A stretch of 63,986 nt of DNA, filler included, from Reticulomyxa filosa (GCA_000512085.1; 17 parts of 17 records of this genome joined end to end with filler, not necessarily neighbours in it); one strand, 5' to 3'; shown: positions 16,743 through 38,926, counted from the whole stretch's first letter. Program-made: numbers and translations. The notes: a model not told the origin generated them from the letters alone.

Positions 16743-17161
16743 TTTGTTTTTGATTGCAATGCTTTTACCAATTTGATTTAAACTGATGCCTTCTTTCAAG
16801 TGCGAATATATGTTATATTATTAGACTTTATCACTGTAATACAAAATTTTTCTAAAATTTTCATCAGTTTTCAATAATACATTGGGATTGAATTGCTCTA
16901 CTTTTAAATGTATTAATAATATTGGCAGAGTTTCAATAATGCTCTGTTATGTGTCACATTTCCTGAGAGTAATTAAAAGTGAATTGAATTAATTGTTCTA
17001 TTTACATTGTTTATACCTTGGCCTTGCAGAATGTTTAGTTCATTTTTTAAACTGATAAGCACCCACGCTAACATTCCTTGCCATAGCATGTTGCAAAAAA
17101 CTGAAGATGATGCTATTCATTAATCAACCATTTCATTTCATTAGTACATTCCAAACAATAA

Positions 17162-17468
17162 GATGTGGCGTAGCTTAATATGTAAAGCCCGCCGAACTTA
17201 CAGTGACTTGATCACATTATGGCTAAAGCCATCTTTGGAGCGTTCTTCAGAACCTGGAAGTGGTGCAAATTCAAGGGTTAATAAGTTGACAGTGTGTTGG
17301 TGTGCATCTTATGTATACTAAGTCGCATGGTCATATACATTCTTGCCTACGCACTAACACACGATCGTTTATATTGCTGTTGGCAATATTGACAATGTAA
17401 GCGGTCGTGCAATATGAAACTCCATATAATTTAGCGGGGATTTGTGTTCGATTCACAAAATCGACATT
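17162..17468 (+). ncRNA. tRNA-like structured element with ~240-nt insert, copy 1
   Basis: A box TAGCTTAATATG at 17171, D stem GCTT/AAGC, T arm TTTGTG-TTCGATT-CACAAA at 17441-17459, A-rich tail; colinear with copies 2 and 3. Confidence 0.7.
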
Positions 17469-18803
17469 AAAAAATAAATTGTTTTTAAAAAAAACATTAC
17501 ATAAATTTGGACATACTTTATAGTATGATGATTTGTATTATATATTCTAGATTAAACATTTACTATTGTTCGATCGCAATAAGTATAATTTGGACAATTG
17601 TCAATAAAGGATATACTCTGTGCAAAATTCACGTTAAAATTGTCGTTATCATTTTTTTATTTCAACATTTTACAAAAAAATAAAATGGAAATGACAAAAG
17701 AAATGTTCTATATGATGAACAACGATCAAAGAGATCCAAAAGTGGGTGAAAACCTGATTATTAATCAATTTTAATGAGTCCTTTGACTTTGCAATTATTG
17801 TTTTGAAAGGTAATGCGATGAAATGATTGATTAATGAATAACATGACCTTCAGAGTCTCAATGACATATCACAAAAACGATGGAAAAGAAAATAAATCAA
17901 TTACTCAAACATTTTGAAAAAATGAACGTAGTTGAACATGTACAACAGTTAAATGCTGTCTCAAGATAAAAAAGATTTTTTCCACTCAAGTTATCAACTT
18001 TGAATGGTCACGTCATTTTATGATCATCAAACAAAAGAGAAGTTAAAAAAACCGTAAGTTTACTTTTTTTTGACGGAGCATTAAACATATTTTTTTTTTT
18101 TATACTATGTTAAATTAAAAAAGATTCAAAATTACAATTGAAAAAACTTTTTTGGATTTTTGTGTTATCATTTTTGCCAATTAATATTCTTTAAAAATGT
18201 TGAATATTGTATAAAAACAGATAAATAGTAAATAATAAGAACATATCATATCTCTACGAACATGGACTATTTCTTCAATCAAGTCTACATCACAAAGATG
18301 AAAAAGAGAACCGAATATCTACACAACAGAATTACAAACTGATTTTAAGTCTTGATAAATTAAGAATGCAATATTACGGACACAATTTGCAATGCACAAT
18401 GAAATGAAAAGATTGATGAAATGATGGAGAAAAAAAAGAATAATATTGTGACAATAAGTCACAGTTGGAAGTAAAGTTTTGTGATATGTCTTGTGAATAG
18501 TACCACTTTTAAAAACAACAAACCAAACGAAAATTACATAGAAAAGAGAAAGTGGAATAATAAATGCTGCATCTCAGCCAAAGCAGCAAGCAAATATTAA
18601 ACGAAGATTATTTCTAACGCTAATCAGGCAGTTTATTCTAATATCGACAATTGCACAAATTATACTTATTGCGTTCAAACTAATGGTGAATGATCACAGC
18701 ATAGTCTGCATAATATTTCTACAATATGAACAAACTATCACAACAAAGTATGTCAATGTCTTTAATTTTTTTTATAAAGTTAATAACAAATTTTTTTTAT
18801 TAA

Positions 18804-19103
18804 TGGCATTGGTTGGACTCGAACCAACATCTCCGCTACATTATATGGAGCTGTCGTATTGCACTACCTCACACATTGCTGATATTACTATCAACAATAT
18901 AAACGATCTTGTGACAGTGCATATGCAAAAATACATATTGCCATGTGACTTTACACATATTTACACAATAATCACCCCAATACTGGTCAGCATATCAACC
19001 CTTTTGAGGTCGCATCATCTCCAGAAATTACGAAGACTGATCGCCATAATCCGATCAAGTCACTATAAATTCAGCTTTATTTACTCATTAAGCTACGGCC
19101 GCC
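18804..19103 (-). ncRNA. tRNA-like structured element with large insert, copy 2
   Basis: Reverse complement reads GGCGGCCGTAGCTTAATGAG...TGTTGATA-GTAA-TATCAGCA...GTTGG-TTCGAGT-CCAAC-CAATGCCA followed by an A-rich tail. Confidence 0.7.
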
Positions 19104-20544
19104 TCATTGTTAATATTTAATTTATTTTTTCCACTTATCACTTTCACTTTGCCAATAAGTCATTTTATTGACAACAATGAACATCTTTAAATAATTTTTT
19201 ATATAAAAACATAAATAAAATCCGACTCCGCAAAAGAATGTTTTCTGAATTAAAAAATTGCGAGAACAAAACTTGATTGACATCTGGCAGCGAACAATCG
19301 AAAGGTGCATAATCTGTATTAAATCAAAAATATCACCATTTTATAGATCTTGTTCACATAACAATAACACCTTTTGACTTGTTGTTCTTCGGTCCAAGTC
19401 CGAACGTAACAAAGTCATAAAGATTAAACAAAGAAATAAATTTAACTTTTACTTTCTTTATTGTTGAATATCAATAAAGAAAGTGATTTGCAAAAACAAA
19501 CTGAAACAAACGAAGTAGCAAACGACAACGTCAACAAAAAAAAAGCAATTCAGACATTACTCATAACTTATAAATTTTATTTTGTTTCTTTTGTGTTTTT
19601 TCGAATTACAGATTCCGCATTTGGTCTCAGCTAATCTCTTTCAGTGAAAAAAATTGTATTACACTATTTAGAAATTATTGAATAAAACTTAATTGAACTT
19701 GCAAAAAAACTATTGAAAAAAACATTTATAAAAATTACAACAATAATGATTATTTGTTTGAATGTCATACTCTTTTTAATTGGTGATAACATTATGAAAA
19801 TGTGACTTTGCATCATATATAAATTTGATGGTCGTATTTCCTATTTGTTTGTAGTATTTTTCCATTAAATTAATTGTTGCCATTCAACATTTAAGTAGGT
19901 ATTACAAAAAAATGAACAATTGTGCAAGTCTTAAAATTTTTCTAATTTTGGTTTTTCCTACAGCTTGGTTACTTATTTTTTTTGTTTGTTGATTCCTGTT
20001 GTGAAAGATTGACCTACTAAAGACTTGCACAAAGCATAATAAGAAAAGAAGGACTATATTTCTCTGAGTTTCGTTGTTGCAAGAGCGATTTGTACTGTAC
20101 TGTTGATTTTGCTTGTTTCATGGAAAAAAAACACATCCTCTCTTTTTAGATAGATAGTACTGTTTAATGCCAAGGCTCAAGTGAACATGAAATCCTTGTC
20201 GTTTACTTATTGAACGATCGCTCAGAGAGCAATACCTTTCGATTACATATTTTTACTTGAATAAATCATATCAGTTATAATAAAAATTTGGTGTATGTAT
20301 TGTATTTATTATTTTGGCTGCAATTAAGTAATTAACTAAAAGTTTATAACGTTTTAGCCCGCGGACAATAGATTATAAATCTTGAAAATAGCAGGAAAGG
20401 CAGAACGATGAAGGATAAAAAAAAATATTTTAAAATACCATTGTATATATTAAACAATATAAAGTTAATATTTTATTACATGAACAATTTCAATTTTGTT
20501 TTTTGAACTTGGTCAACATATTAAAAAAAAGGTAAAGCATTCTC

Positions 20545-22176
20545 ATGATGGCTGAGCCAGAAGAAAAAACGAGCAGTGATTTGGAAGAAAAAAAGGAAGT
20601 TGTGGTAGAAGAAAGTGGTACTAGTGTTCATGTGACAAAAGTTCCTCTCTTTACAGTGGCTTTGGACGCAGATCCCTCCGTTCGTTGGAAGGAGATAATC
20701 ACAGCATACAAAGTTAACAAAATAATGGCTGAACAATGCAACACACACCAAATCCAAATAAACTCATATGAATATATTCAACATATACAGAAAGATTTTG
20801 AAAGAGTGAGGAAAGTGATAAATCAATTTGTGGAAAATGAAGGTGGCAAAACGGGTGAAATATTGAAGTCAATAATAACAGGGACGTTGAAGCAATTCAA
20901 ATGGATGGTATATTATAAAGAAGATTTAGAGGCTATTTCAGCGCTATCTGGCATGCCAATTGGTAAAATTTCTTTTCTTCATATATGTACATATATATAT
21001 AAACAACAAACAAGATTTTTTTAAAAAAATGAAAGGTGAATTAATAATGATGCAATTGATATACGAAGCAACGGCATTATGCACAAGCATAGTAACAATT
21101 GATCGAAAGAATGAAAGCAAGCCAATCCATATCCGAACGATGGATTGGGAAATGGAGTTTTTGCAACCTTTAACGATTGAAATTCAGTTCACGCTCCAAA
21201 ATCAAGTGATCTGTCATTGCACAACTTGGGCAGGATATGTCGGTATTTTGACGGGACTCTATTTTAATCACTCCGAGTCTTCCAAATCCTTTGAATGTGT
21301 CAGCGTTAGTGTGAATTTTCGTGTGACAGGAACAGGCTATTGGACGAACCTTAAAAAAACTTTAAGTGGTAGTTGGCCCATTGGATTCAAACTAAGAGAT
21401 TTGTTGACCACGCCACATCAATCATTTGACTCCGTTGTTTCTTCCCTGAAAACGGCAGAGTTTATTGCGCCAGTTTACTTTACTATTGCTGGAAGTCGTC
21501 TCGGTCAGGCTATCATTATTACTCGTGATCGCACCGAACATGAACAACCTTATTCCTTCACTGATGAAACACCTTTTATTGTTCAAACTAATATTGGTTT
21601 GCAAATATTTATATACATTGCTTATTTATTAATTTTATATAATTTTTGTTTGTATGAATTAAAAAAGATCATTGGTCCAATAAACAAGAAGATGATATCA
21701 TGTGGTCGATCAGTCGAAGACGTAATGTGAAGAAACAATTGCTCCAATTACTGGAACAAAACAAATTGGGTGTAAATAGTGATGAATTGTGGGATTTAAT
21801 AAGTATGCCTCCAATCTTTAATGATATTACTGTTTATGGCACTTTGATGATTCCATCTTTGGGATACCTTGAAACCAGAATACCTCATCCTCAACTAGGA
21901 TTCAAACCCGTCTCTCAAAAATTCGCACAAGACTCTGAAAAGCTAATTTGGAAAACCTGCACAAAGTGCAATACTCGAGTTCATGTTTCATTAAATGTGA
22001 AAGGTGAATGTGTTCATTCAGGTGAATGGCATGACGACTATGACAAATGCAGTACTGTTAAATGCGGTTGGAATTTAGGACTTTCAAAAATTGGAAAATG
22101 CCATTGGTCTTGTTGCTTTAATACCAATTTCGATTCTTTTTGTGTCAAGAGTGACTTTCATATTGTTTCTGATTGA
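20545..22176 (+). CDS. Acid ceramidase/NAAA-like Ntn hydrolase with a C-terminal Cys/His-rich domain, multi-exon
   Basis: LDADPSVRW, nucleophile CTSIV, HIRTMDW, TWAGYVGILTG, APVYFTIAG, ITRDR and VQTN motifs; C-terminal CTKC...CVHSGEW...WSCC. Confidence 0.88.
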
Positions 22177-22380
22177 GACATATATTTTTTTCTTTTGCTT
22201 ATTTTCATTGAATATAACTTCATCATTTCTGGAAACAAAACAGTTATGACTTCTCTTGAAAAATTCAGAACAAAGTGTAATAAAAAGGCATTTCAGAAAG
22301 TAATTTGAAACATTGCTAGTATAAATACTTTTTATTTTTTGTTCGTTTAATTTAAAAAAATATTCCATAAAATTTAAGGA

Positions 22381-23145
22381 TTAAATTTGTGAAAAAAAAG
22401 GTTGTGATGTAGGTAAGTCTGGAATGTCCAAACCCCAAAATCCTTCAGGAGTATTTTCTTTTTTGAAAGTGCTTCGATGACGTGAAACATGATTATGCAA
22501 CGAAGTATTCCCATTGACTGCACCAATGCCATTGTAAAATTGTTGGCATTCATAACATGCATGTCCAGGCAATTTTTGTTTTTCTTTACCACGAGTTCCG
22601 GTTTCATAATATCTGGTTTGTGGTTTCTGTGATTGTAAAGGAAAAGAGTCGTCATGACATTGTTGATGTTTGTTGATTGGTTGAGAATTGAGGTTGATCT
22701 TTTCATAAGAGATCCTAGTTATTGATTGACTTGAATTAGAACTGGGTTTTTTTTGTATCAATTCAATAGATGAATCACTATCTTTGCAATGACCATCATA
22801 CATGTCATTATTGTTTATGATTGCATTCATCTTTGTATGTAATTCAATTCTATTATCTTTTAGATTTTGCTGAGATAACAATTCTTGAAACTTTTGAAGT
22901 AATTGCTCATATTCTTTTTGTAATGCCTCATGTGATCTTGTTACACATTTCAATTTATCTTTCAATTTTTGCTCTTTTCTTTGGTAATGTTCCTTCATTT
23001 TATTAAGTTCTATTTCGTATAAACATTGTTGGGGCGTGTCTTCATGATTGGTTGATACTTGTGCTGTGTTCCCGGAATATCTTGATTTTCGGCGTTGTAG
23101 TGACCGTGATGAAAATAATAGTGGTGAGAGTTGTTGTTGTTGCAT
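22381..23145 (-). CDS. COM1: CtIP/Sae2/COM1 DNA end-resection protein
   Basis: N-terminal coiled coil plus the C-terminal signature LPGHACYECQQFY...VSRHRS...NTPEGFW. Confidence 0.85.
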   Translation of the reverse strand: MQQQQLSPLLFSSRSLQRRKSRYSGNTAQVSTNHEDTPQQCLYEIELNKMKEHYQRKEQKLKDKLKCVTRSHEALQKEYEQLLQKFQELLSQQNLKDNRIELHTKMNAIINNNDMYDGHCKDSDSSIELIQKKPSSNSSQSITRISYEKINLNSQPINKHQQCHDDSFPLQSQKPQTRYYETGTRGKEKQKLPGHACYECQQFYNGIGAVNGNTSLHNHVSRHRSTFKKENTPEGFWGLDIPDLPTSQPFFSQI

Positions 23146-23279
23146 TTTGTTATTTTTGTTTTTAACTAAAGTTGGTTGTGATTGTCGTAAGTTATAGCAA
23201 GTTTTTTTTTCTGTTTCTGAGAGACTCCTTTTTGTCTTACTGTTTTCCGTTTTAAAGAGCAACAATTTTTTTTTAATTT

Positions 23280-23520
23280 AAAACAGAATCTGAAGTTATT
23301 CAAAGAACTAATCATACTAAATTTGGTTTTGCTGCTGGTATTTTAACACAAGATCCACAAAAAGCAATTAGAATTGCTCAATCTTGGTTTTAAACAATCT
23401 GGAATTGGTCGTAAATGGGGTAAAGAAGGGCTTATTTGTTATACTCAAACTAAATCTATTTTTACAAATAATCATATTATTCCAATTTCTTATCTACCTC
23501 ATTTATGGTATATATAATCT
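23280..23520 (+). pseudogene. Aldehyde dehydrogenase C-terminal fragment (truncated, internally deleted)
   Basis: [33 protein letters not shown] joined directly to [24 protein letters not shown]. The intervening ALDH segment and the whole N-terminus are absent. Confidence 0.75.
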
Positions 23521-24432
23521 TAATTGTCCTTTTTATTCAATTGTTTTTGTTTTATATTTTTAATTTTGTGACATTTATACTTTTCACGAACATTTTATTT
23601 CTTCTAAGATAATAAATTCGTAAATCCAAATCAAAGATTGCAGCATCATTTATATTTGTAATTTTGTCTCAATTTTTTATATCAAAAAATCTCAACTTTA
23701 CAACTTTTCCTTTTGTCATGCAAGTCAATAATTTTGATTAAACTCTGAGTCATTCCTTTTTTTGTTCATAAAACGATTTATTCATACACATTTATTATTA
23801 AATTACAATACATTCAAAAGTGATAACTTGAATAGAAATATACTTTTTTATTCTTGAGATGGCGCTAAATTGTTGATACGAGTTTCTTTCAACAATTTTG
23901 CAAGTTCAATTAAGCTTTATAATAATTTCTAGATAATGTAATAAAATTTTTTTGCTGAAAGAGATTACAGAGTATTTCGATTCAAAAAACTACAAAAGAA
24001 ACAAAATTCGTAAGTTATGAGTAAAGTTCTGAGTAAAGTTCTGAGTGCCCTTTTTTGTTGTTGTCGTTGTCGTTTGTATCTTCTGTTGTGTTTTTTAAAC
24101 TGCTTTCTTTATTTATTCTACAGTAAAGAAAGTCAAAGTTAAGTTTGTTTTATTTGTTTAATCTTTTTGACTTTGTTACTTCGGACTTATGCCGAAGAAC
24201 AGGTGAAAAAAATTTTATTGTTCTATGAACAACATTTTAAAAAAATTCCATTTGATTTGATTAATATATTCTGGACCATTACATTGTTGCTACCCATACT
24301 GAACAAAGTTTTGTTCTTGGAATTTTTTATTTCTCCGAAAAAATACTCGGAGTCGGACTATTTTAATATTTTTGTTATTTAAATGTTTTTTATCTTATTG
24401 GGAGAAAAATACATCAAGTCTTAACAATTAGT

Positions 24433-24746
24433 GGCTGCGTAGCTTAATATGTAAAGCCCGCCGAATTTATAGTGACTTGATTACATTAGGGCCAGCCATC
24501 TTTGGATAGTTCTTCGGAACTTCTGGGGGTGGTTCAATCTCAAAAGGGTTGATAGGTTGGCCAGTGTGTTGGGGTGCGTCTTGATTGTATATTGTACTAA
24601 GTCGCAGGGTCATATACATTCTTGCCTACACACTGACACACGATCGTTTATATTGCTGGTAGCAATATTGGCAATGTGAGCGGTCGTGCAATGTAGCAAC
24701 TCACTATAATGTAGCGTAGATGCGGGTTCGAGTCCTGCCTCTGACC
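24433..24746 (+). ncRNA. tRNA-like structured element with ~240-nt insert, copy 3 (best preserved)
   Basis: A box at 24440; B box GGTTCGAGTCC at 24725; GTTC-TTCG-GAAC hairpin at 24509-24520; long GCAA-capped hairpin at 24639-24688; TTATAGTGA/TCACTATAA closing helix. Confidence 0.75.
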
Positions 24747-25908
24747 TTTATTAAAAAAAAAAACAAAATTTATTTTATTTTTTAAAGTTAATAGCAAAAA
24801 TATGTGCTTTTACATTGTAGTGTTGATTTATTTAAATTTAGAAGTTCCATATGGATTGTTGGTGCTGTTCACGTGATTGTGGCTATTGTAATGGTAAAAT
24901 GATTGAGGCTGTCGCAATTGTTTTGGACACAGTGGGGCGTTGTTAAGTGTTTTATGGCGCACTACGCAAATACTTGCTATCACTTGGAATTGGCCGATGC
25001 GTTTGTAAAAGTAGTAGATTGATCATATATGTCAATGGTAAGAATGTACTTACAATGATGATCCAAGATTTGAAATTTAGGTTTTATCTTCTTGGCACAG
25101 CGAGCAAGTTGTTACATCCGGCATTTTTCTCCAAAATCTGCATGTGATCTTTTGACAGCGTCGCCATAACCAAACGAGGTCCATGCGTAAATCAACATGT
25201 CATTGTCTTTATGGATTATTGCCCATTTTTTTGCAACTTTCATCATCTCCAATAGCTTTCATAAATATTGGCTCCTTTTTGTTTTGTTTTTTTTAAGTTT
25301 CATCTTCAAGTTGTGTCAACATTTTCATTGTTTATTTGTTTTAATCAACTCTAAAGATCCCACATTTGTAAAATCATAAGCATAAATCAATAAATCTACT
25401 TTGGGTAAATCAAATTAATACATTTGTATTATGAGTAGGAATCAATTAAAACTTATTTGATGGTAATGTCCAGTCTGTAGGAATTTATATTCTTCGTGTA
25501 GAAAGGAGTAATAGACCTTGAGAAGAAAAAAGACGAACGACGGCCTACCAAAAAAACGAGGACGATAGGATGAACAATACCAGTTCTGTGCTCGGAGGGA
25601 TACGTCCAATCGATCCTTCTGCAGTTAAGCTGTTCGTTGCAGTAGTTTAGTTTCAAAAGTTCAAAATCATCCCCCAAAGTACGTTGCAACATTTTTTTTT
25701 GGAAAGCTCTTTTTTTTAAATGGACTTCTTTTTTGTTTTTTGTTTGTCAAACTTTTTTTACTTTCTTTCGCGTCGGCTGTAGTGGTAATGCAATATACAT
25801 TATGTTTTTATTGACCACGCAGGTTAAAAAGGCAAACAAGGATTTTTTCAAAAGATTGATATCTAACAATTCGAAATATTTATCAATATTTTTCTTCAAA
25901 ACAGGATA

Positions 25909-28491: not shown

Positions 28492-31400
28492 ATGTCTCAA
28501 ATATCGTCGTTTTGTACACTCAATAATTGCGTACAAGGATGTCCATTTCGAGACTATTGTGCTTGGACTCACATTATCCCAGGACATTTTGTAACTATTC
28601 GTAATATTCAGAACCAAGATGATTTAGGGATACTAAAAAATTTACTAACACGTAATTTGATGTTTTAATCTTTTCTTTTTGTATACGCCGTAAACTGAGT
28701 TGTATTAACCAAAAAAAAGTGGTTCTCCAGAACGAATTTTACCATATGCACGGATATTCGGATCAACCAAAGTGTTGCACGATTGAATTTTGTTCTGCAA
28801 AGGTCAGATATATCCAGTTCTGAGAGAGGAGAGAAAAAGATGTACAACACGTACAAAGACGACACAAAACATAACAATGAGAATAGACACGTGATGAGGC
28901 AATTTACAAGTTAAAAATGTGGGGCAGCGACAAAGGCGTCCTTTTTTCAACTGAGTCCCCTAAAGAAGTCGATTCGAGTTCTTTTTTTTATTTCGCAACT
29001 TTTTTTTAACATTTTCAATTTACATAAACAAACAAATAAAAAAATAATCATATAGAATCGGTAATTTTATTAAATTGAACACGTTTTTGAACATACAGCA
29101 AAAAGAAAAACGTATACACGTTTTTTTTTTTGTGTGTGCGTATATAGGGGAAAAAAACTGAATCGAAACAAAGAAAACAATTATGTCGTAACTTCAACAG
29201 TGTTCAGGGTTGTCCCGAAGGAAAAAATTGCGAACAGCGACATATGACACGAAGCAAGTTTTTGACGATAACAAATCTCCCAGACGTAATCAATAGTTTT
29301 TCTAAACTCAGAACGTTTGTTCGAAGTGCGTTTGATCGGCCTCCCCAGTTTAATATTCATAGTTGCGGTAATTTTCGCAAGTGTTATTCCCTGGAATTTG
29401 CCACCGAAAAAGTGTGTGGCATTTTTCCTTGCCTTTTTATAATCTATCTTTTCCGCGTTTTTCACAAACGCAAATTATAACAAACGATATATTTTGTATT
29501 GTTTTCGATTGTGACAAACTTTGCTTAGCATCGCGCAGCAGTGGAAAAGAAGCTTGAACCATTTGTGAAGAATGGAATTCAAGTAAATTACAATTCTCCA
29601 AAACAGACTTATTCTATTCTCAGTTGATACTACCTTTTCTTTTTTTTTTTAATGAAAATAGAAAATATTTAGGTTGGATTTTATGAAATATAGATCACGA
29701 AGACAACCCAGAAACAAGACCAAGAAAGATATGTAATCACTTTAACACCCCGAAAGGATGTTGGAAAGGTAATAATTGCCCGTTTCAACACGTGAACAAC
29801 AACTCATCCCAAATTGACAACAACCCGTTTCAATCAGGTATTGCTAATCCTTTCCAACAAGGCATTACTAATCCTTTCCAACAAAATGTTATTAATCCTT
29901 TCCAACAAGGTGTTATTAATCCTTTCCAACAAAATATTACTAATCCTTTCCAATACATTGATAACCAGTCATCGTCAAAGCACTCCGAATACAAGCCATT
30001 TCCGAATGGCGTGTGCTGGTATTTCAACACTCCAAAAGGTTGTAGTGCCGACAAGTGCGAATACAGCCATGTGCAGATCAGTGTGGAAGAGAAAAAAATG
30101 ATCAAATGTCCACAAAAGAAGTGCTCAGGTCGATGTCCCTTTGCACACAACAATGTCAATCACGACGATGCTGAGACAAACACATTTTGCACAAGATTCA
30201 ACTCCACACAGGGATGCAGAGGCAATTATAGATGCTTGAAAAAACACATTAAACCACCTATTTGTCTTACTGTTTATCATGTTCCATCGTTTATGAACAA
30301 ACACGAATATATTCTCTCATTGTTGGTAACTCCTCTCGGCAAAGAGTTTATCTTTGTCCACAGCCATCCTGATTTTCCTGATTGTTACACAATCGAATTT
30401 TCTAATTCTGAGGTTTGTTCAAACTCTATTAAATATTTTTATACGTATGTATATCTTTAACATGCTTCTTTTGGTTTTGATCAGTCACGAGACAAAGCAA
30501 AAAATTATTTGCAAAATAAACTCGAGAATGAAGATATCAAGTATTCCGAACATTCACCGCTCGAAGCGGAATTTGAATGTAAAAGTTAAGATCTTGGTTG
30601 TTGTATCTCCTTTCCCATGCTTTTTTTTTTCTTTTTCTTTCGCCAAACTATTTGTGTAATGCAATGATACAACAGAAATGCGCTCCTCCAAGTCGACAAA
30701 GCGAGAAACAAAAGAAGACGAAAAAACCGAATCTCTTCTCCCCTTGAAGAAATTGGAAGCTGTTTGGGTAATCATATATATATTTTTTTGGATTTAATTT
30801 CCATTTCATTTTTATTTCACTTGCGAAACAGCGCAACAAAAAAAAAAAGGAATGGAGAGACGATGATACCATATTACGACCTTATCCCAAAGACGTGTCC
30901 AATCAATTGGAACAAGCAAAATTGGGCGAGAAAGTTAAGCATTTTTGGACTGGACTTAAACAAAATCAAATTTTTTCATTGCAATTTATGTATGTACGTA
31001 TATGTGTATATATACGCACACGTACGTGTTATAGGTAACACATACCACATCGGGATGGACTTATGAAATTACAAAAATTGCGAGTGGCAAAGCAATTCAA
31101 AGAAATGTTTCCAGCAAAAGAGAGAGAGAAGTATTGAGAACAGTCGTGGAAAGTTACGTTTTTTTAATTTCAAAGCACAACTCACAATTGACAATTCGCC
31201 AATGCATTACATATAAATAACAGTCACGTACACGATTTCTGGTTCCCCGGATTGGTGGGATGTGACTCGTTCGTCAAATGAAACAGTAGAATTTATGCAA
31301 ATCAGTTGGAAAAATCAAAAAACTGCCGTGGAAAAGTTTGCTGCGCAAGCGGTAAATGAATTTTACAGCACTTTGGATAAAAAGCAGTATGAAATTGTCG

Positions 31401-36708: not shown

Positions 36709-38926
36709 TTAAAATAAAATTTGTAATTTTTTACCAGCAATAGTGGTTGGAAAAGCTTTGAAAAGTGTTTCTCTTTTTGTTTTTTTTAATCGCATAGCCT
36801 TGATTTTGGAAGCGCAGAGTTGACATAAATGAGACGAAGGAAGAAATAAATGAATATCTTGAATGGAATGAAGTAGATGAGCAACAGATAAAAAGATATG
36901 ATGAGTGAGATCAGAAAAATCTTTAATATCAGTAACAATTTCAGTATAAGCATCAAGTAAAAGATCCCAAGATACTCCACAATAACGCATAATATGAATA
37001 ATAGTATTATTTTTTGAAGATATTGGAATAGGATGTAGAATAATTTGTTGTTCTAAAAATTGAATAATAAAAGAAATAGGAAAAATAAAATAAGAATCTT
37101 TAGAAATATCATGATTATCAGACCACCATTTTAATTCATTAGTAACAGTATCAATCCAATTAGTAGTATCAGAAATAGAAGAAGATAAAGTTTGATTAAT
37201 AATATCAGTAATCCATTCTTGCCAAATTTTTTTAATTTCTTGTTGATAACGTCGTGATGATTGAAAAGCAAGACATTCTAAAGCAATATTCCAAATATGA
37301 TAAAATTTAGCAATATCAAAAATATTAGAAATATCCATAAATTGTTCTTCAATATTTTTACATACAGTTAAATATTGTTTACGTTCAATAGAAAAAGGAA
37401 GAGAAGATTCATCTAAATCATTCATACGTTTTAAAGCAATTAAAAGTTTTTTTTGAATAATACATATTTTATATAATTTATCAAAATTATAAATAGTAAT
37501 ATCTTGTTCTAATTCTTCATTAAATGTATATTGAAAATTAGAAGAAGAAGAAGAATATATATTATCATGAATAATTTTTGTAATCATAATACCATCAAGT
37601 AAAAATTGTTCTCTTTCATGTAATGATATACCAATAACATGATTACAAATATAATTTATAAAATGTATATAATCTTTATATCTTTTTAAATGTAAATAAT
37701 ATTTTAATAATTGTTTCCATTTATTTAATTTATATAATAAATTTTCTTCTTCTTCTTTTTCTTCTTTTAAAAAATCTTCTAATCCTCTAGGTTTTTTAGA
37801 AAATATAATATATAATAATTGTCTTTCACAAAGCCATTGATATAATTTTTTTAAAAAATATATATCACCATTAGATAAACAAATATCTAAAATTTTTTGT
37901 ATATTTAAATCTTTATTTAATATATTACTATTATTATTATTATTATTATTATTATTATCATCATTTTCTTTTTCAAATAATTCTTTAATAGTAATAAATA
38001 TTTCATTATAACATAAATTAATCTTATTTTCTATATATTGTATATCTAAATCAGGAAATGTACCAGTCTTTAATTGATTTAACATATAAAAAGATAAATC
38101 AATAGCACCACTATAAAAATTAATATTACGAAGTGTAGAACATATTGATTGTAAATCAAAAGAAGGATCATCACATGCTTTTTTAAATAAAGATAATGCT
38201 TTATTATAATTTATTTCATTATATTCTTTATTTATAAATATTTTATTTGCCATAAAAGAAATTAAATCTTGTGATGAAAATAATCTAGGTGCACTTAAAT
38301 GTAATTGTTCTATTTGTCCTTCATTATTCATTATTTTAATTAATGCACGAATAATACATTTTATATTATTTATATTATTATCATTATTACTATTTATTAT
38401 AATAGAATTTATTATTTCAAATGATTGTAATATAATTTGTTCTTGAGTAGATAATGAATTATACATTTTATTAAAATATGTTGGTGTTGATACAAAAAGT
38501 AATATATAAAATAATTCTATACATATTTCAATACAAGCTAAAAAATATTGTATTTGTTTATTAATAATAGATAATTTATTATTATTATTATTGTTATTAT
38601 TATCATTTGATTTTGTCCATAAATAAATATTTGATTCTACAAATTGTTTTAAATTTGATAATATAGATAATGTTTTTTTTAATTGAATACAATTCCAACG
38701 AGGATATGATATATCATTAGAATCAATAATAATAAATGAATAATATAAATATGGACGAAGAATTCTAGATAAATATAAATATAATGAAAATATTTTAGAA
38801 CCATTACAAATAGAATTAAATGGAATCCATTGATTATTTTTAACTAAAAATTGTATTTTTAATTTATCACTAGTTTTAGAATTAATAAAATAATGTATAG
38901 CAATAGAAGATTCTGTATTATTATTA
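36709..38926 (-). CDS. NUP155: Nucleoporin Nup155/Nup170 C-terminal helical region (5' partial)
   Basis: LYLYLSRILRP upstream, SAPRLFSSQD, KALSLF..DLQSICSTL..FYSGAIDL, LYQWL, ISLHEREQFL and FPISFIIQFLEQ match Nup155 landmarks. Confidence 0.7.

What the first reader, a model, noticed from the sequence alone, without database searches (positions are those of the whole stretch)
17162..24746. Compensatory base changes among the three copies point to selection on RNA structure
The T stems differ in sequence but all pair: TTGTG/CACAA (copy 1), GTTGG/CCAAC (copy 2), GCGGG/CCTGC (copy 3), each around TTCGA(T/G)T. The long hairpin keeps a GNRA loop (GCAA, GTAA, GCAA), with stems TGTTGATA/TATCAGCA in copy 2 and TGCTGGTA/TATTGGCA in copy 3. 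Neutral decay of a single SINE source should break pairs rather than swap them. Inference: either several functional paralogues or several structurally constrained source genes. The seven bases 3' of the T arm differ in each copy, and copy 2 ends in GCCA, so 3' ends may have been exchanged with different tRNA-like donors.
Basis: partly seen in the sequence, partly recalled or inferred. Interest (0 to 1): 0.8.

Follow-up and report, generated by a model that had tools for sequence, protein, structure and literature searches.

The report
Three tRNA-framed structured RNA copies
Three neighbouring ~310-base copies in the foraminiferan Reticulomyxa filosa have tRNA-like promoter ends around a strongly folding core; one looks like an intact gene for an unknown small RNA and the other two look like decaying duplicates, so the reported compensatory changes are real but only partly show selection.

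Summary
The piece is a whole 25-kb nuclear contig of Reticulomyxa filosa.

Each copy has a tRNA-consensus D arm (A-box-like) at its 5' end. At its 3' end it has a 5-nt variable loop and a canonical T arm; c2 and c3 have a perfect B box. About 245 nt of hairpins lie between. No acceptor stem forms, and ARAGORN and Rfam find nothing.

The T stem took about 9 substitutions without losing a pair (P about 1e-4 under random point changes).

Only c3 is well folded: z -6.0 sense against -2.2 antisense, with 22 G.U pairs and no A.C mismatch. c1 and c2 show AT-biased decay and broken helices, and they keep c3's pairs no better than random placement of the same substitutions. Their flanks are as conserved as the element.

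Flanks were duplicated together with the copies and there are no target-site duplications, so these are local DNA duplicates, not SINE insertions.

Best reading: one unannotated Pol III-type structured RNA gene (c3) plus two degenerating duplicates. No genome-wide copies and no RNA reads could be reached.

The parts
24431..24746 (+). Copy 3 (c3): the intact-looking copy, 316 nt, GC 46%
   Evidence: MFE -120.7 kcal/mol, z -6.0, against antisense -78.3, z -2.2. It has 94 WC and 22 G.U pairs and no A.C 1x1 loop. It is the best-folding element-sized stretch with strand asymmetry in the contig.
17162..17466 (+). Copy 1 (c1): a decaying duplicate with a weakened B box (UGUUCGAUUCA). It lacks the upstream block shared by c2 and c3.
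   Evidence: About 86% identical to c3, over the element only. z -3.4. 26 specific substitutions, S>W 19 to W>S 7. 10 of them lie in the last 34 alignment columns.
18804..19102 (-). Copy 2 (c2): the most diverged duplicate, with a perfect B box but a damaged D stem, long hairpin and closing helix
   Evidence: 75-77% identical to c1 and c3. z -2.4. 44 specific substitutions, S>W 27 to W>S 11. It has a 14-nt deletion in the 5' domain.
24440..24457 (+). tRNA-like D arm / A-box-like block of c3 (UAGCUU..GUAAAGC), preceded by the variable 7-nt 'acceptor-like' patch at 24433-24439
   Evidence: Nearly identical to positions 8-25 of the Rfam tRNA consensus line printed. It is conserved in all three copies, while the 7 nt before it vary in every column.
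24467..24487 (+). 5' strand of the 19-bp helix that closes the ~245-nt core in c3. It pairs with 24690-24709.
   Evidence: c3 MFE. Two of its pairs exist only in c3, through an adjacent CA>AC change at alignment columns 275-276.
24509..24520 (+). Small hairpin capped by a C(UUCG)G tetraloop in c3
   Evidence: c3 MFE. The loop is altered in c1 (UUCA) and c2.
24639..24688 (+). Long hairpin: 23 bp with a GCAA loop in c3, holding 7 G.U pairs and no mismatch
   Evidence: (helix 10). Its 5' strand GAUCGUUUAUAUUG is invariant in the three copies. c1 and c3 are 96% identical here.
24690..24709 (+). 3' strand of the closing helix in c3
24712..24746 (+). tRNA-like 3' module of c3: UAGCG (pairs 4/5 with CGCCG at 24459-24463), 5-nt variable loop, T arm 24722-24738 holding a perfect B box at 24725-24735, then an 8-nt tail
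   Evidence: B box with 0 mismatches. Weak tRNA covariance-model match of 13.1 bits over 24683-24739, below the gathering score of 29. T-stem covariation.
23868..24430 (+). Upstream block shared by c3 and c2 (c2 side: 19105-19736, minus strand)
   Evidence: Blast match of about 1 kb at 69%. Alignment with long identical blocks. About 82% identity without gaps, against 68% for an unrelated AT-rich control.
17467..17650 (+). Downstream block shared by c1 and c2 (c2 side: 18630-18803, minus strand)

Best explanation
This is a small local family of a previously unannotated gene for a structured RNA of about 315 nt in Reticulomyxa filosa. The gene is built on a split tRNA-derived frame.

Anatomy (shown):
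- The 5' end is a tRNA-type D arm that looks like an A box.
- The 3' end is a variable loop plus a canonical T arm that holds a B box.
- The place of the anticodon loop is taken by a ~245-nt domain. That domain is closed by a long helix and holds a UUCG-capped hairpin, a 7-bp-closed subdomain and a 23-bp GNRA-capped hairpin.

Mechanism (inferred, not shown): RNA polymerase III is recruited by TFIIIC through the A and B boxes, which lie about 275 nt apart. It starts near the conserved AACAAT just upstream and stops in the T runs 30-40 nt after the T arm. The T-arm hairpin would then act both as promoter DNA and as a 3' RNA hairpin.

Status of the copies: c3 is the intact copy. c1 and c2 are duplicates made by local inverted DNA duplications that carried flanking sequence, and they have since drifted toward the AT-rich background. 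The element-only similarity of c1 and c3, and the mutation cluster in the c1 T arm, suggest later patchy gene conversion or templated mutation among family members.

The cellular function of the RNA is unknown.
For: - Organism and contig: ASPP01010646.1 of GCA_000512085.1, Reticulomyxa filosa.
- Anatomy and conservation of the A-box-like and B-box blocks.
- Strong, strand-specific folding of c3: z -6.0 against -2.2; 22 G.U pairs and 0 A.C.
- Control: the homologous upstream flanks of c2 and c3 fold alike and about equally on both strands, so c3's advantage is specific to the element.
- The element has 39-46% GC in a 26-28% GC intergenic background. c1 and c2 decay toward AT and c3 does not.
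- The 19 changes on the c3 branch separate a -109 sequence from a -120.7 sequence. Random placement of the same changes gives -101 +/- 6, with 0 of 200 reaching c3.
- T-stem pairing is kept at P about 1e-4.
- Flanks were co-duplicated and there are no TSDs.
- Only three copies, all within 7.6 kb, and none in the other 17.6 kb of the contig.
- No gene model overlaps them.
Against: - No expression data: no sequencing run was listed.
- No other copy or orthologue could be fetched, so everything rests on three related sequences.
- For c2-c3 and c1-c2 the flanks are at least as similar as the element, so purifying selection is not shown for those pairs.
- The c3-branch result depends on rooting. 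Read in the other direction it is ordinary neutral damage on a common c1+c2 stem.
- No acceptor stem forms (3-4 of 7 pairs), so tRNA-type processing is not expected.
- c2 has no run of four or more T near its end.
- The G+U-rich composition explains part of the strand asymmetry: shuffle means are -91 against -68.
- No Rfam family matches, so no function can be assigned.
Confidence: 0.45

Rival explanations
1. The copies belong to a tRNA-derived SINE-like retroelement. Their RNA fold is inherited from one or several source genes, and the different T arms mark different source subfamilies. The three copies here are insertions that were later caught up in local duplications.
For: - A-box-like and B-box blocks and tRNA-like pieces.
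- An A-rich run directly after the 3' tail in all three copies.
- c1 and c3 share only the element, with sharp borders at 17154/24423 and 17478/24762.
- 30.5% of the assembly is reported as repeats (PMC13746701, Table 1).
- Strand-specific fold, as expected of a transcribed source.
Against: - No target-site duplications of 8 nt or more.
- c2 shares 620 nt upstream with c3 and about 190 nt downstream with c1, so DNA-level duplication is needed anyway.
- The three copies sit within 7.6 kb, with none in the remaining 17.6 kb.
- The B box sits about 275 nt from the A box instead of inside a ~70-nt tRNA head.
- Sequence homology among the copies continues through the A-rich run.
- Copy number could not be measured.
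Confidence: 0.25
2. There is no RNA function. This is a tRNA pseudogene that carries a TA-flanked insertion with terminal inverted repeats (MITE-like). Replication template switching between nearby inverted repeats created and repaired the stems. That mechanism yields 'compensatory' double changes in a single mutational event.
For: - The core of c3 is bounded by TA|TAGTGA ... TCACTA|TA. c1 reads TA|CAGTGA, like Tc1/mariner ends (that resemblance is from my own knowledge).
- An adjacent CA>AC change closes two pairs at once in c3.
- 10 of the 26 c1-specific changes cluster at the T arm and tail (p 2e-4). The c1 tail AAUCGA is the exact reverse complement of its own T loop UCGAUU.
- The neighbouring upstream block is full of short palindromes that fold on both strands.
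- The mechanism is documented in PMC8794818.
Against: - DNA-level inverted repeats should fold equally on both strands and should decay into G.U-type and A.C-type mismatches alike. c3 has 22 G.U pairs and no A.C. Its long hairpin has 7 G.U pairs and 0 mismatches. Sense z is -6.0 against -2.2 antisense.
- The flank palindromes are symmetric, but the element is not.
- The inside of the core is several separate hairpins, not a fold-back.
Confidence: 0.15
3. One reading: all three copies are functional paralogues, each under selection for the same RNA fold.
For: - All three T arms are perfect hairpins with canonical T loops.
- All three fold better in sense than in antisense.
- c1 and c2 are somewhat more stable than random placement of their own substitutions would give (P 0.11 and 0.085).
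Against: - AT-biased substitution in c1 and c2.
- The closing helix is broken in both, and c2's long hairpin has four mismatches.
- Pair retention is no better than random.
- The element is no better conserved than its flanks.
- c1 has lost the upstream block and two B-box positions. c2 has lost the D stem register, 14 nt of the 5' domain and a T-run terminator.
Confidence: 0.1

Closest known systems
tRNA-derived SINEs (Pol III retroelements with a tRNA-related head)
   Same: tRNA-derived A-box and B-box sequences, size of about 300 nt, an A-rich run at the 3' side, several copies with about 75-86% identity.
   Different: The B box and T arm are at the extreme 3' end, about 275 nt from the A box, not within a ~70-nt head. 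No target-site duplications. Flanks are co-duplicated. The copies are clustered. Copy number is unknown.
tmRNA and tRNA-scaffold RNAs (a tRNA-like domain carrying a large insert)
   Same: The two ends come from a tRNA (D-arm side and T-arm side) and a large structured domain lies between them.
   Different: No acceptor stem, no tag reading frame, and no ARAGORN tmRNA call at default settings. Nuclear eukaryotic context. The D loop lacks the GG needed for the tRNA elbow.
Intron-containing nuclear tRNA genes
   Same: D arm, a 4/5-bp anticodon-stem-like pairing (CGCCG/UAGCG), a 5-nt variable loop and a T arm stand in tRNA register around the insert.
   Different: The acceptor stem has only 3-4 of 7 pairs. 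Position 33 in that register is A, not U. The insert is about 245 nt. ARAGORN with introns allowed finds no gene at default stringency; at relaxed stringency it pairs these T arms only with unrelated upstream sequence.
Pol III genes with widely spaced or tRNA-borrowed promoters (yeast SNR6; herpesvirus MHV68 tRNA-miRNA units; plant tRNA-snoRNA dicistrons). Comparison from my own knowledge.
   Same: Internal A and B boxes drive a non-tRNA structured RNA. A long perfect hairpin lies next to a tRNA-like module.
   Different: Here the tRNA-like parts bracket the structured RNA instead of preceding it. Nothing is known of transcription or processing.

Membership tests
tRNA gene (with or without intron) | Detected by tRNA finders or the covariance model at standard thresholds | tested here: not met
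   ARAGORN finds 0 genes at default settings, also with introns allowed. The Rfam tRNA model gives 13.1 bits against a gathering score of 29, on the 3' 57 nt of c3 only.
tRNA gene (with or without intron) | 7-bp acceptor stem between the 5' end and the 7 nt after the T stem | tested here: not met
   Read in register: c1 3/7, c2 3/7, c3 4/7 pairs. No consistent alternative partner was found.
tRNA gene (with or without intron) | Canonical T arm (5-bp stem, UUCRANN loop, G53-C61) and D arm | tested here: met
   T arm present in all three copies. The D stem is 4/4 in c1 and c3 and 2/4 in register in c2.
tRNA gene (with or without intron) | Anticodon loop with U33 and an intron at 37/38 | tested here: not met
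In the tRNA register the loop reads AA(C/U)UUA(C/U), with A at position 33.
tRNA-derived SINE | Target-site duplications and a simple-repeat or poly(A) tail at the end of homology | tested here: not met
   No shared 8-mers flank c1 or c3. An A-rich run is present, but the three copies still align (partly) through the 20-30 nt after it, and c1-c2 homology runs about 190 nt past the element.
tRNA-derived SINE | Copies share the element but not their flanks | tested here: inconclusive
   True for c1 against c3. False for c2 against c3 (620 nt upstream shared) and for c1 against c2 (about 190 nt downstream shared).
tRNA-derived SINE | High, dispersed copy number in the genome | not testable with these tools
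   No genome is held and no runs were listed. Within the contig there are only three copies, and they are clustered.
tmRNA | tRNA-like domain with acceptor stem, tag peptide frame, bacterial or organellar setting | tested here: not met
   ARAGORN finds none at default settings. The contig carries intron-containing nuclear genes: nucleoporin, SAE2/CtIP, NAAA-like.
MITE (TA-targeting, terminal inverted repeats) | Terminal inverted repeats flanked by a TA duplication | tested here: inconclusive
   c3 has a 19-bp terminal helix with TA on both sides. This cannot be told apart from an RNA closing helix. In c1 and c2 the repeat matches only about 11-12 of 20 positions (read).
MITE (TA-targeting, terminal inverted repeats) | Structure is a DNA-level property, equal on both strands | tested here: not met
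   Sense against antisense MFE: -120.7/-78.3, -91.3/-70.2, -84.8/-56.5. 15-22 G.U pairs in sense against 3-8 in antisense.
Any Rfam family (SRP, RNase P/MRP, snRNAs, 7SK, vault, Y, ribozymes, group I intron) | Covariance-model match at or near the gathering score | tested here: not met
   No match at gathering score. At E up to 10 there are only chance-level hits.

The most novel reading that the evidence does not exclude
c3 encodes a natural 'tRNA-scaffolded' RNA. In this reading a tRNA body (D arm, anticodon-stem remnant, T arm) has been turned into the promoter and terminal clamp for a new 245-nt structured domain. That would be a eukaryotic nuclear counterpart of the tmRNA layout, possibly specific to foraminifera. 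Its T arm would evolve by whole-stem replacement while keeping its shape.
Probability: 0.15. Interest if true: 0.75.

Novelty: new variant of a known kind. Interest (0 to 1): 0.45.

Why it matters
Almost nothing is known about non-coding RNAs or Pol III genes in foraminifera, or in Rhizaria generally. If c3 is expressed, it would be a new class of structured small RNA. Its tRNA-derived promoter halves are pulled about 275 nt apart around a new domain.

The triplet of one intact and two decaying copies is also a clean small case for a general question: how to separate true compensatory evolution from patch conversion or template-switch mutation.

If it turns out to be a SINE, it would be the first described for this group, with an unusual 3' T-arm module.

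Tried and rejected
- ARAGORN at default settings, with introns, and in mitochondrial and tmRNA modes. Nothing at default. At relaxed thresholds there were dozens of false calls, some anchored on the three T arms but paired with unrelated 5' halves.
- Rfam at gathering score and at E up to 10, on 8 kb and on c3 alone. No family matched. By hand I rejected SRP RNA (no helix-8 internal loops), RNase P/MRP (no P4 partner for the CR-I-like GGAACUUCUGGG), a telomerase template (not conserved), H/ACA RNA (the ACA is only in c1) and a group I intron (no P1 guide).
- Whole-genome search: no genome is held.
- Sequencing runs: none was listed.
- Metagenome scan with an invariant 14-mer plus the B-box core gave 11 loci. 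All were chance matches by blastn, and the contig itself is not in that collection.
- Protein route to other copies. The 145-aa antisense ORF over c2 has no relatives. No gene models overlap the copies. The nucleoporin ORF found only itself.
- Search for an acceptor partner of the 3' tail anywhere in the element gave only G/U-rich chance matches in shifting register.
- The genome paper (Glockner et al. 2014) is not held. No paper on foraminiferal SINEs was found.
Full report
WHERE THIS IS. The piece (window 13704-38926) is one complete 25,223-bp contig, ASPP01010646.1 of assembly GCA_000512085.1. A paper names that assembly as the freshwater foraminiferan Reticulomyxa filosa. Window coordinate equals record coordinate plus 13703. 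The contig carries ordinary nuclear genes with introns: an NAAA-like amidase, SAE2/CtIP, peptidyl-tRNA hydrolase, ribosomal protein L1 and a nucleoporin. Intergenic DNA has about 26-28% GC.

THE OBSERVATION. There are three copies of a ~300-nt element: c1 17162-17466 (+), c2 19102-18804 (-) and c3 24431-24746 (+). An nhmmer profile finds no further copy or fragment in the contig. On the three-way alignment a consensus fold has 79 pairs. 92% of cells pair, against 34-47% when partners are slid by 1-3 columns. Eight pairs changed on both sides, four of them in the 5-bp T stem.

ANATOMY. The 5' end (UAGCUUAAUAUGUAAAGC in c3, 24440-24457) is almost the Rfam tRNA consensus for positions 8-25, that is a D arm and A-box-like block. 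The 3' end stands in tRNA register. It holds UAGCG (4/5 pairs with CGCCG just after the D arm), a 5-nt variable loop, a canonical T arm and then 7+1 nt. c2 and c3 have a perfect B box, GGTTCGAGTCC. About 245 nt lie between the two ends. In c3 this core is closed by a 19-bp helix (24467-24487 with 24690-24709). It contains a C(UUCG)G-capped hairpin, a subdomain closed by 7 bp, and a 23-bp hairpin with a GCAA loop (24639-24688).

It is not a tRNA. The acceptor stem has only 3-4 of 7 pairs in each copy. Position 33 would be A. The D loop lacks GG. ARAGORN, with or without introns, and the tRNA covariance model do not accept it. No Rfam family matches, even at E up to 10.

IS THE STRUCTURE SELECTED?

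Evidence for:
- The fold is strand-specific. c3 sense is -120.7 kcal/mol (z -6.0) and antisense is -78.3 (z -2.2). c1 and c2 show the same direction.
- c3 has 94 Watson-Crick and 22 G.U pairs and not one A.C 1x1 loop. Its long hairpin has 7 G.U pairs and no mismatch. A decaying DNA palindrome should give both kinds of mismatch.
- The T stem absorbed about 9 substitutions (four double changes and one wobble change) with no broken pair. Under random point substitution this has P about 3e-5 to 1e-4.
- The element has 39-46% GC in a 26-28% GC background.
- The 19 substitutions on the c3 branch separate a -109 kcal/mol majority sequence from c3's -120.7. Random placement of the same substitutions gives -101 +/- 6, and 0 of 200 trials reach c3.
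- As a control, the homologous upstream flanks of c2 and c3 fold alike and roughly equally on both strands. c3's advantage therefore belongs to the element, not to the locus.

Evidence against a general claim:
- When c3's own MFE structure is taken as reference, c1 and c2 keep its pairs no better than random placement of their substitutions (P 0.11 and 0.14). The reciprocal tests are also unremarkable.
- c1 and c2 have 26 and 44 lineage-specific substitutions with a GC-to-AT bias of 19:7 and 27:11, the pattern of unconstrained drift toward the background. c3 has 8:9.
- For the pairs that share flanks, the flanks are at least as similar as the element: about 82% against 75-77%. Gapped global alignment inflates identity in AT-rich DNA, since an unrelated control gives 68%.
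- The c3-branch result depends on the root. Read from c3 toward the majority sequence, the loss of stability is ordinary.
- So either c3 kept the ancestral fold while a common c1+c2 stem decayed, or c3 improved. Both readings make c3 the constrained copy. Neither supports three functional paralogues.

HOW THE COPIES AROSE. c2 and c3 share about 620 nt of upstream sequence, with long identical blocks. c1 and c2 share about 190 nt downstream. c1 and c3 share only the element, yet they are the most similar pair: about 86% overall and 96% over the long hairpin. No target-site duplications are present. c2 and c3, with their upstream blocks, form an inverted ~1-kb repeat around the NAAA-like and SAE2 genes. 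c1 and c2 are convergent. This mosaic fits local inverted DNA duplications followed by patchy conversion among the copies. It does not fit three independent retropositions.

THE T ARM. Variation is concentrated in three places: the 7 nt before the D arm (7 of 7 columns vary), the T stem (8 of 10) and the tail (7 of 8). The T loop (1 of 7) and the D-arm block (5 of 21) are stable.

In c1, 10 of the 26 specific changes fall in the last 34 columns (Fisher p 2e-4), and eight of them are G>T or C>A transversions. The c1 tail AAUCGA is the reverse complement of its own T loop UCGAUU. That looks like one or a few patch events, meaning conversion from another family member or a templated (template-switch) mutation. 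Template switching is known to create and repair hairpins in one step (PMC8794818). It does not look like four separate compensations. Whether real tRNA genes were the donors cannot be tested without the genome.

VERDICT. There is good evidence that the family's RNA fold matters, or mattered, on the plus strand, and that c3 still keeps it. c1 and c2 look like decaying duplicates. The T-arm swaps may be patch events.

The best reading (about 0.45) is an unannotated Pol III-type structured RNA gene on a split tRNA-derived frame, with two pseudogene duplicates. Transcription, processing and function are all inferred. The rivals are a tRNA-derived SINE family (0.25), a DNA-level palindrome or MITE-in-pseudogene history with template switching (0.15), and three functional paralogues (0.10).

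The decisive data could not be reached: genome-wide copies, the organism's tRNA genes and RNA reads.

Noticed in passing
window 29810-29953 (ORF 29792-30460, +): Six or more tandem 24-nt units encode an octapeptide repeat of the type NPFQQ(G/N)(I/V)(T/A/I) inside a 222-aa ORF with no Pfam match.
   Followed up: no
window 17101-17143 and 17811-17853: A 43-nt inverted repeat, 86% complementary, brackets c1 and its downstream block as a ~750-bp unit. c1's homology to the other copies stops 10 nt inside the left arm's end. This may be the insertion or rearrangement that removed c1's upstream block.
   Followed up: partly
window 23868-24430 and 19105-19736 (-): The ~620-nt block upstream of c2 and c3 is as conserved as the element. 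It is full of short palindromes that fold on both strands, for example CTTTCTTTA..TAAAGAAAG, TTCGG..CCGAA and, in c3 only, CTCCGA..TCGGAG. z is about -2 to -3.6 on both strands in both copies.
   Followed up: partly
window 18717-19736 and 23868-24843: c2 and c3, with their upstream blocks, make a ~1-kb inverted repeat facing outward around two convergent genes: NAAA-like (20408-22176, +) and SAE2/CtIP-like (22381-23315, -).
   Followed up: no
window 17590-17640 and 18640-18690 (-), approximate: About 130-180 nt downstream of c1 and c2 lies a block that is better conserved than its surroundings: CGCAATAAGTATAATTTG.(A/G)CAATTGTC, 27 of 29 identical.
   Followed up: no
window 36709-38926: The contig's end drops to 16-23% GC, yet it holds a 585-aa single-exon ORF with a Nucleoporin_C domain. 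A search of 5.8 billion proteins found only the ORF itself.
   Followed up: no
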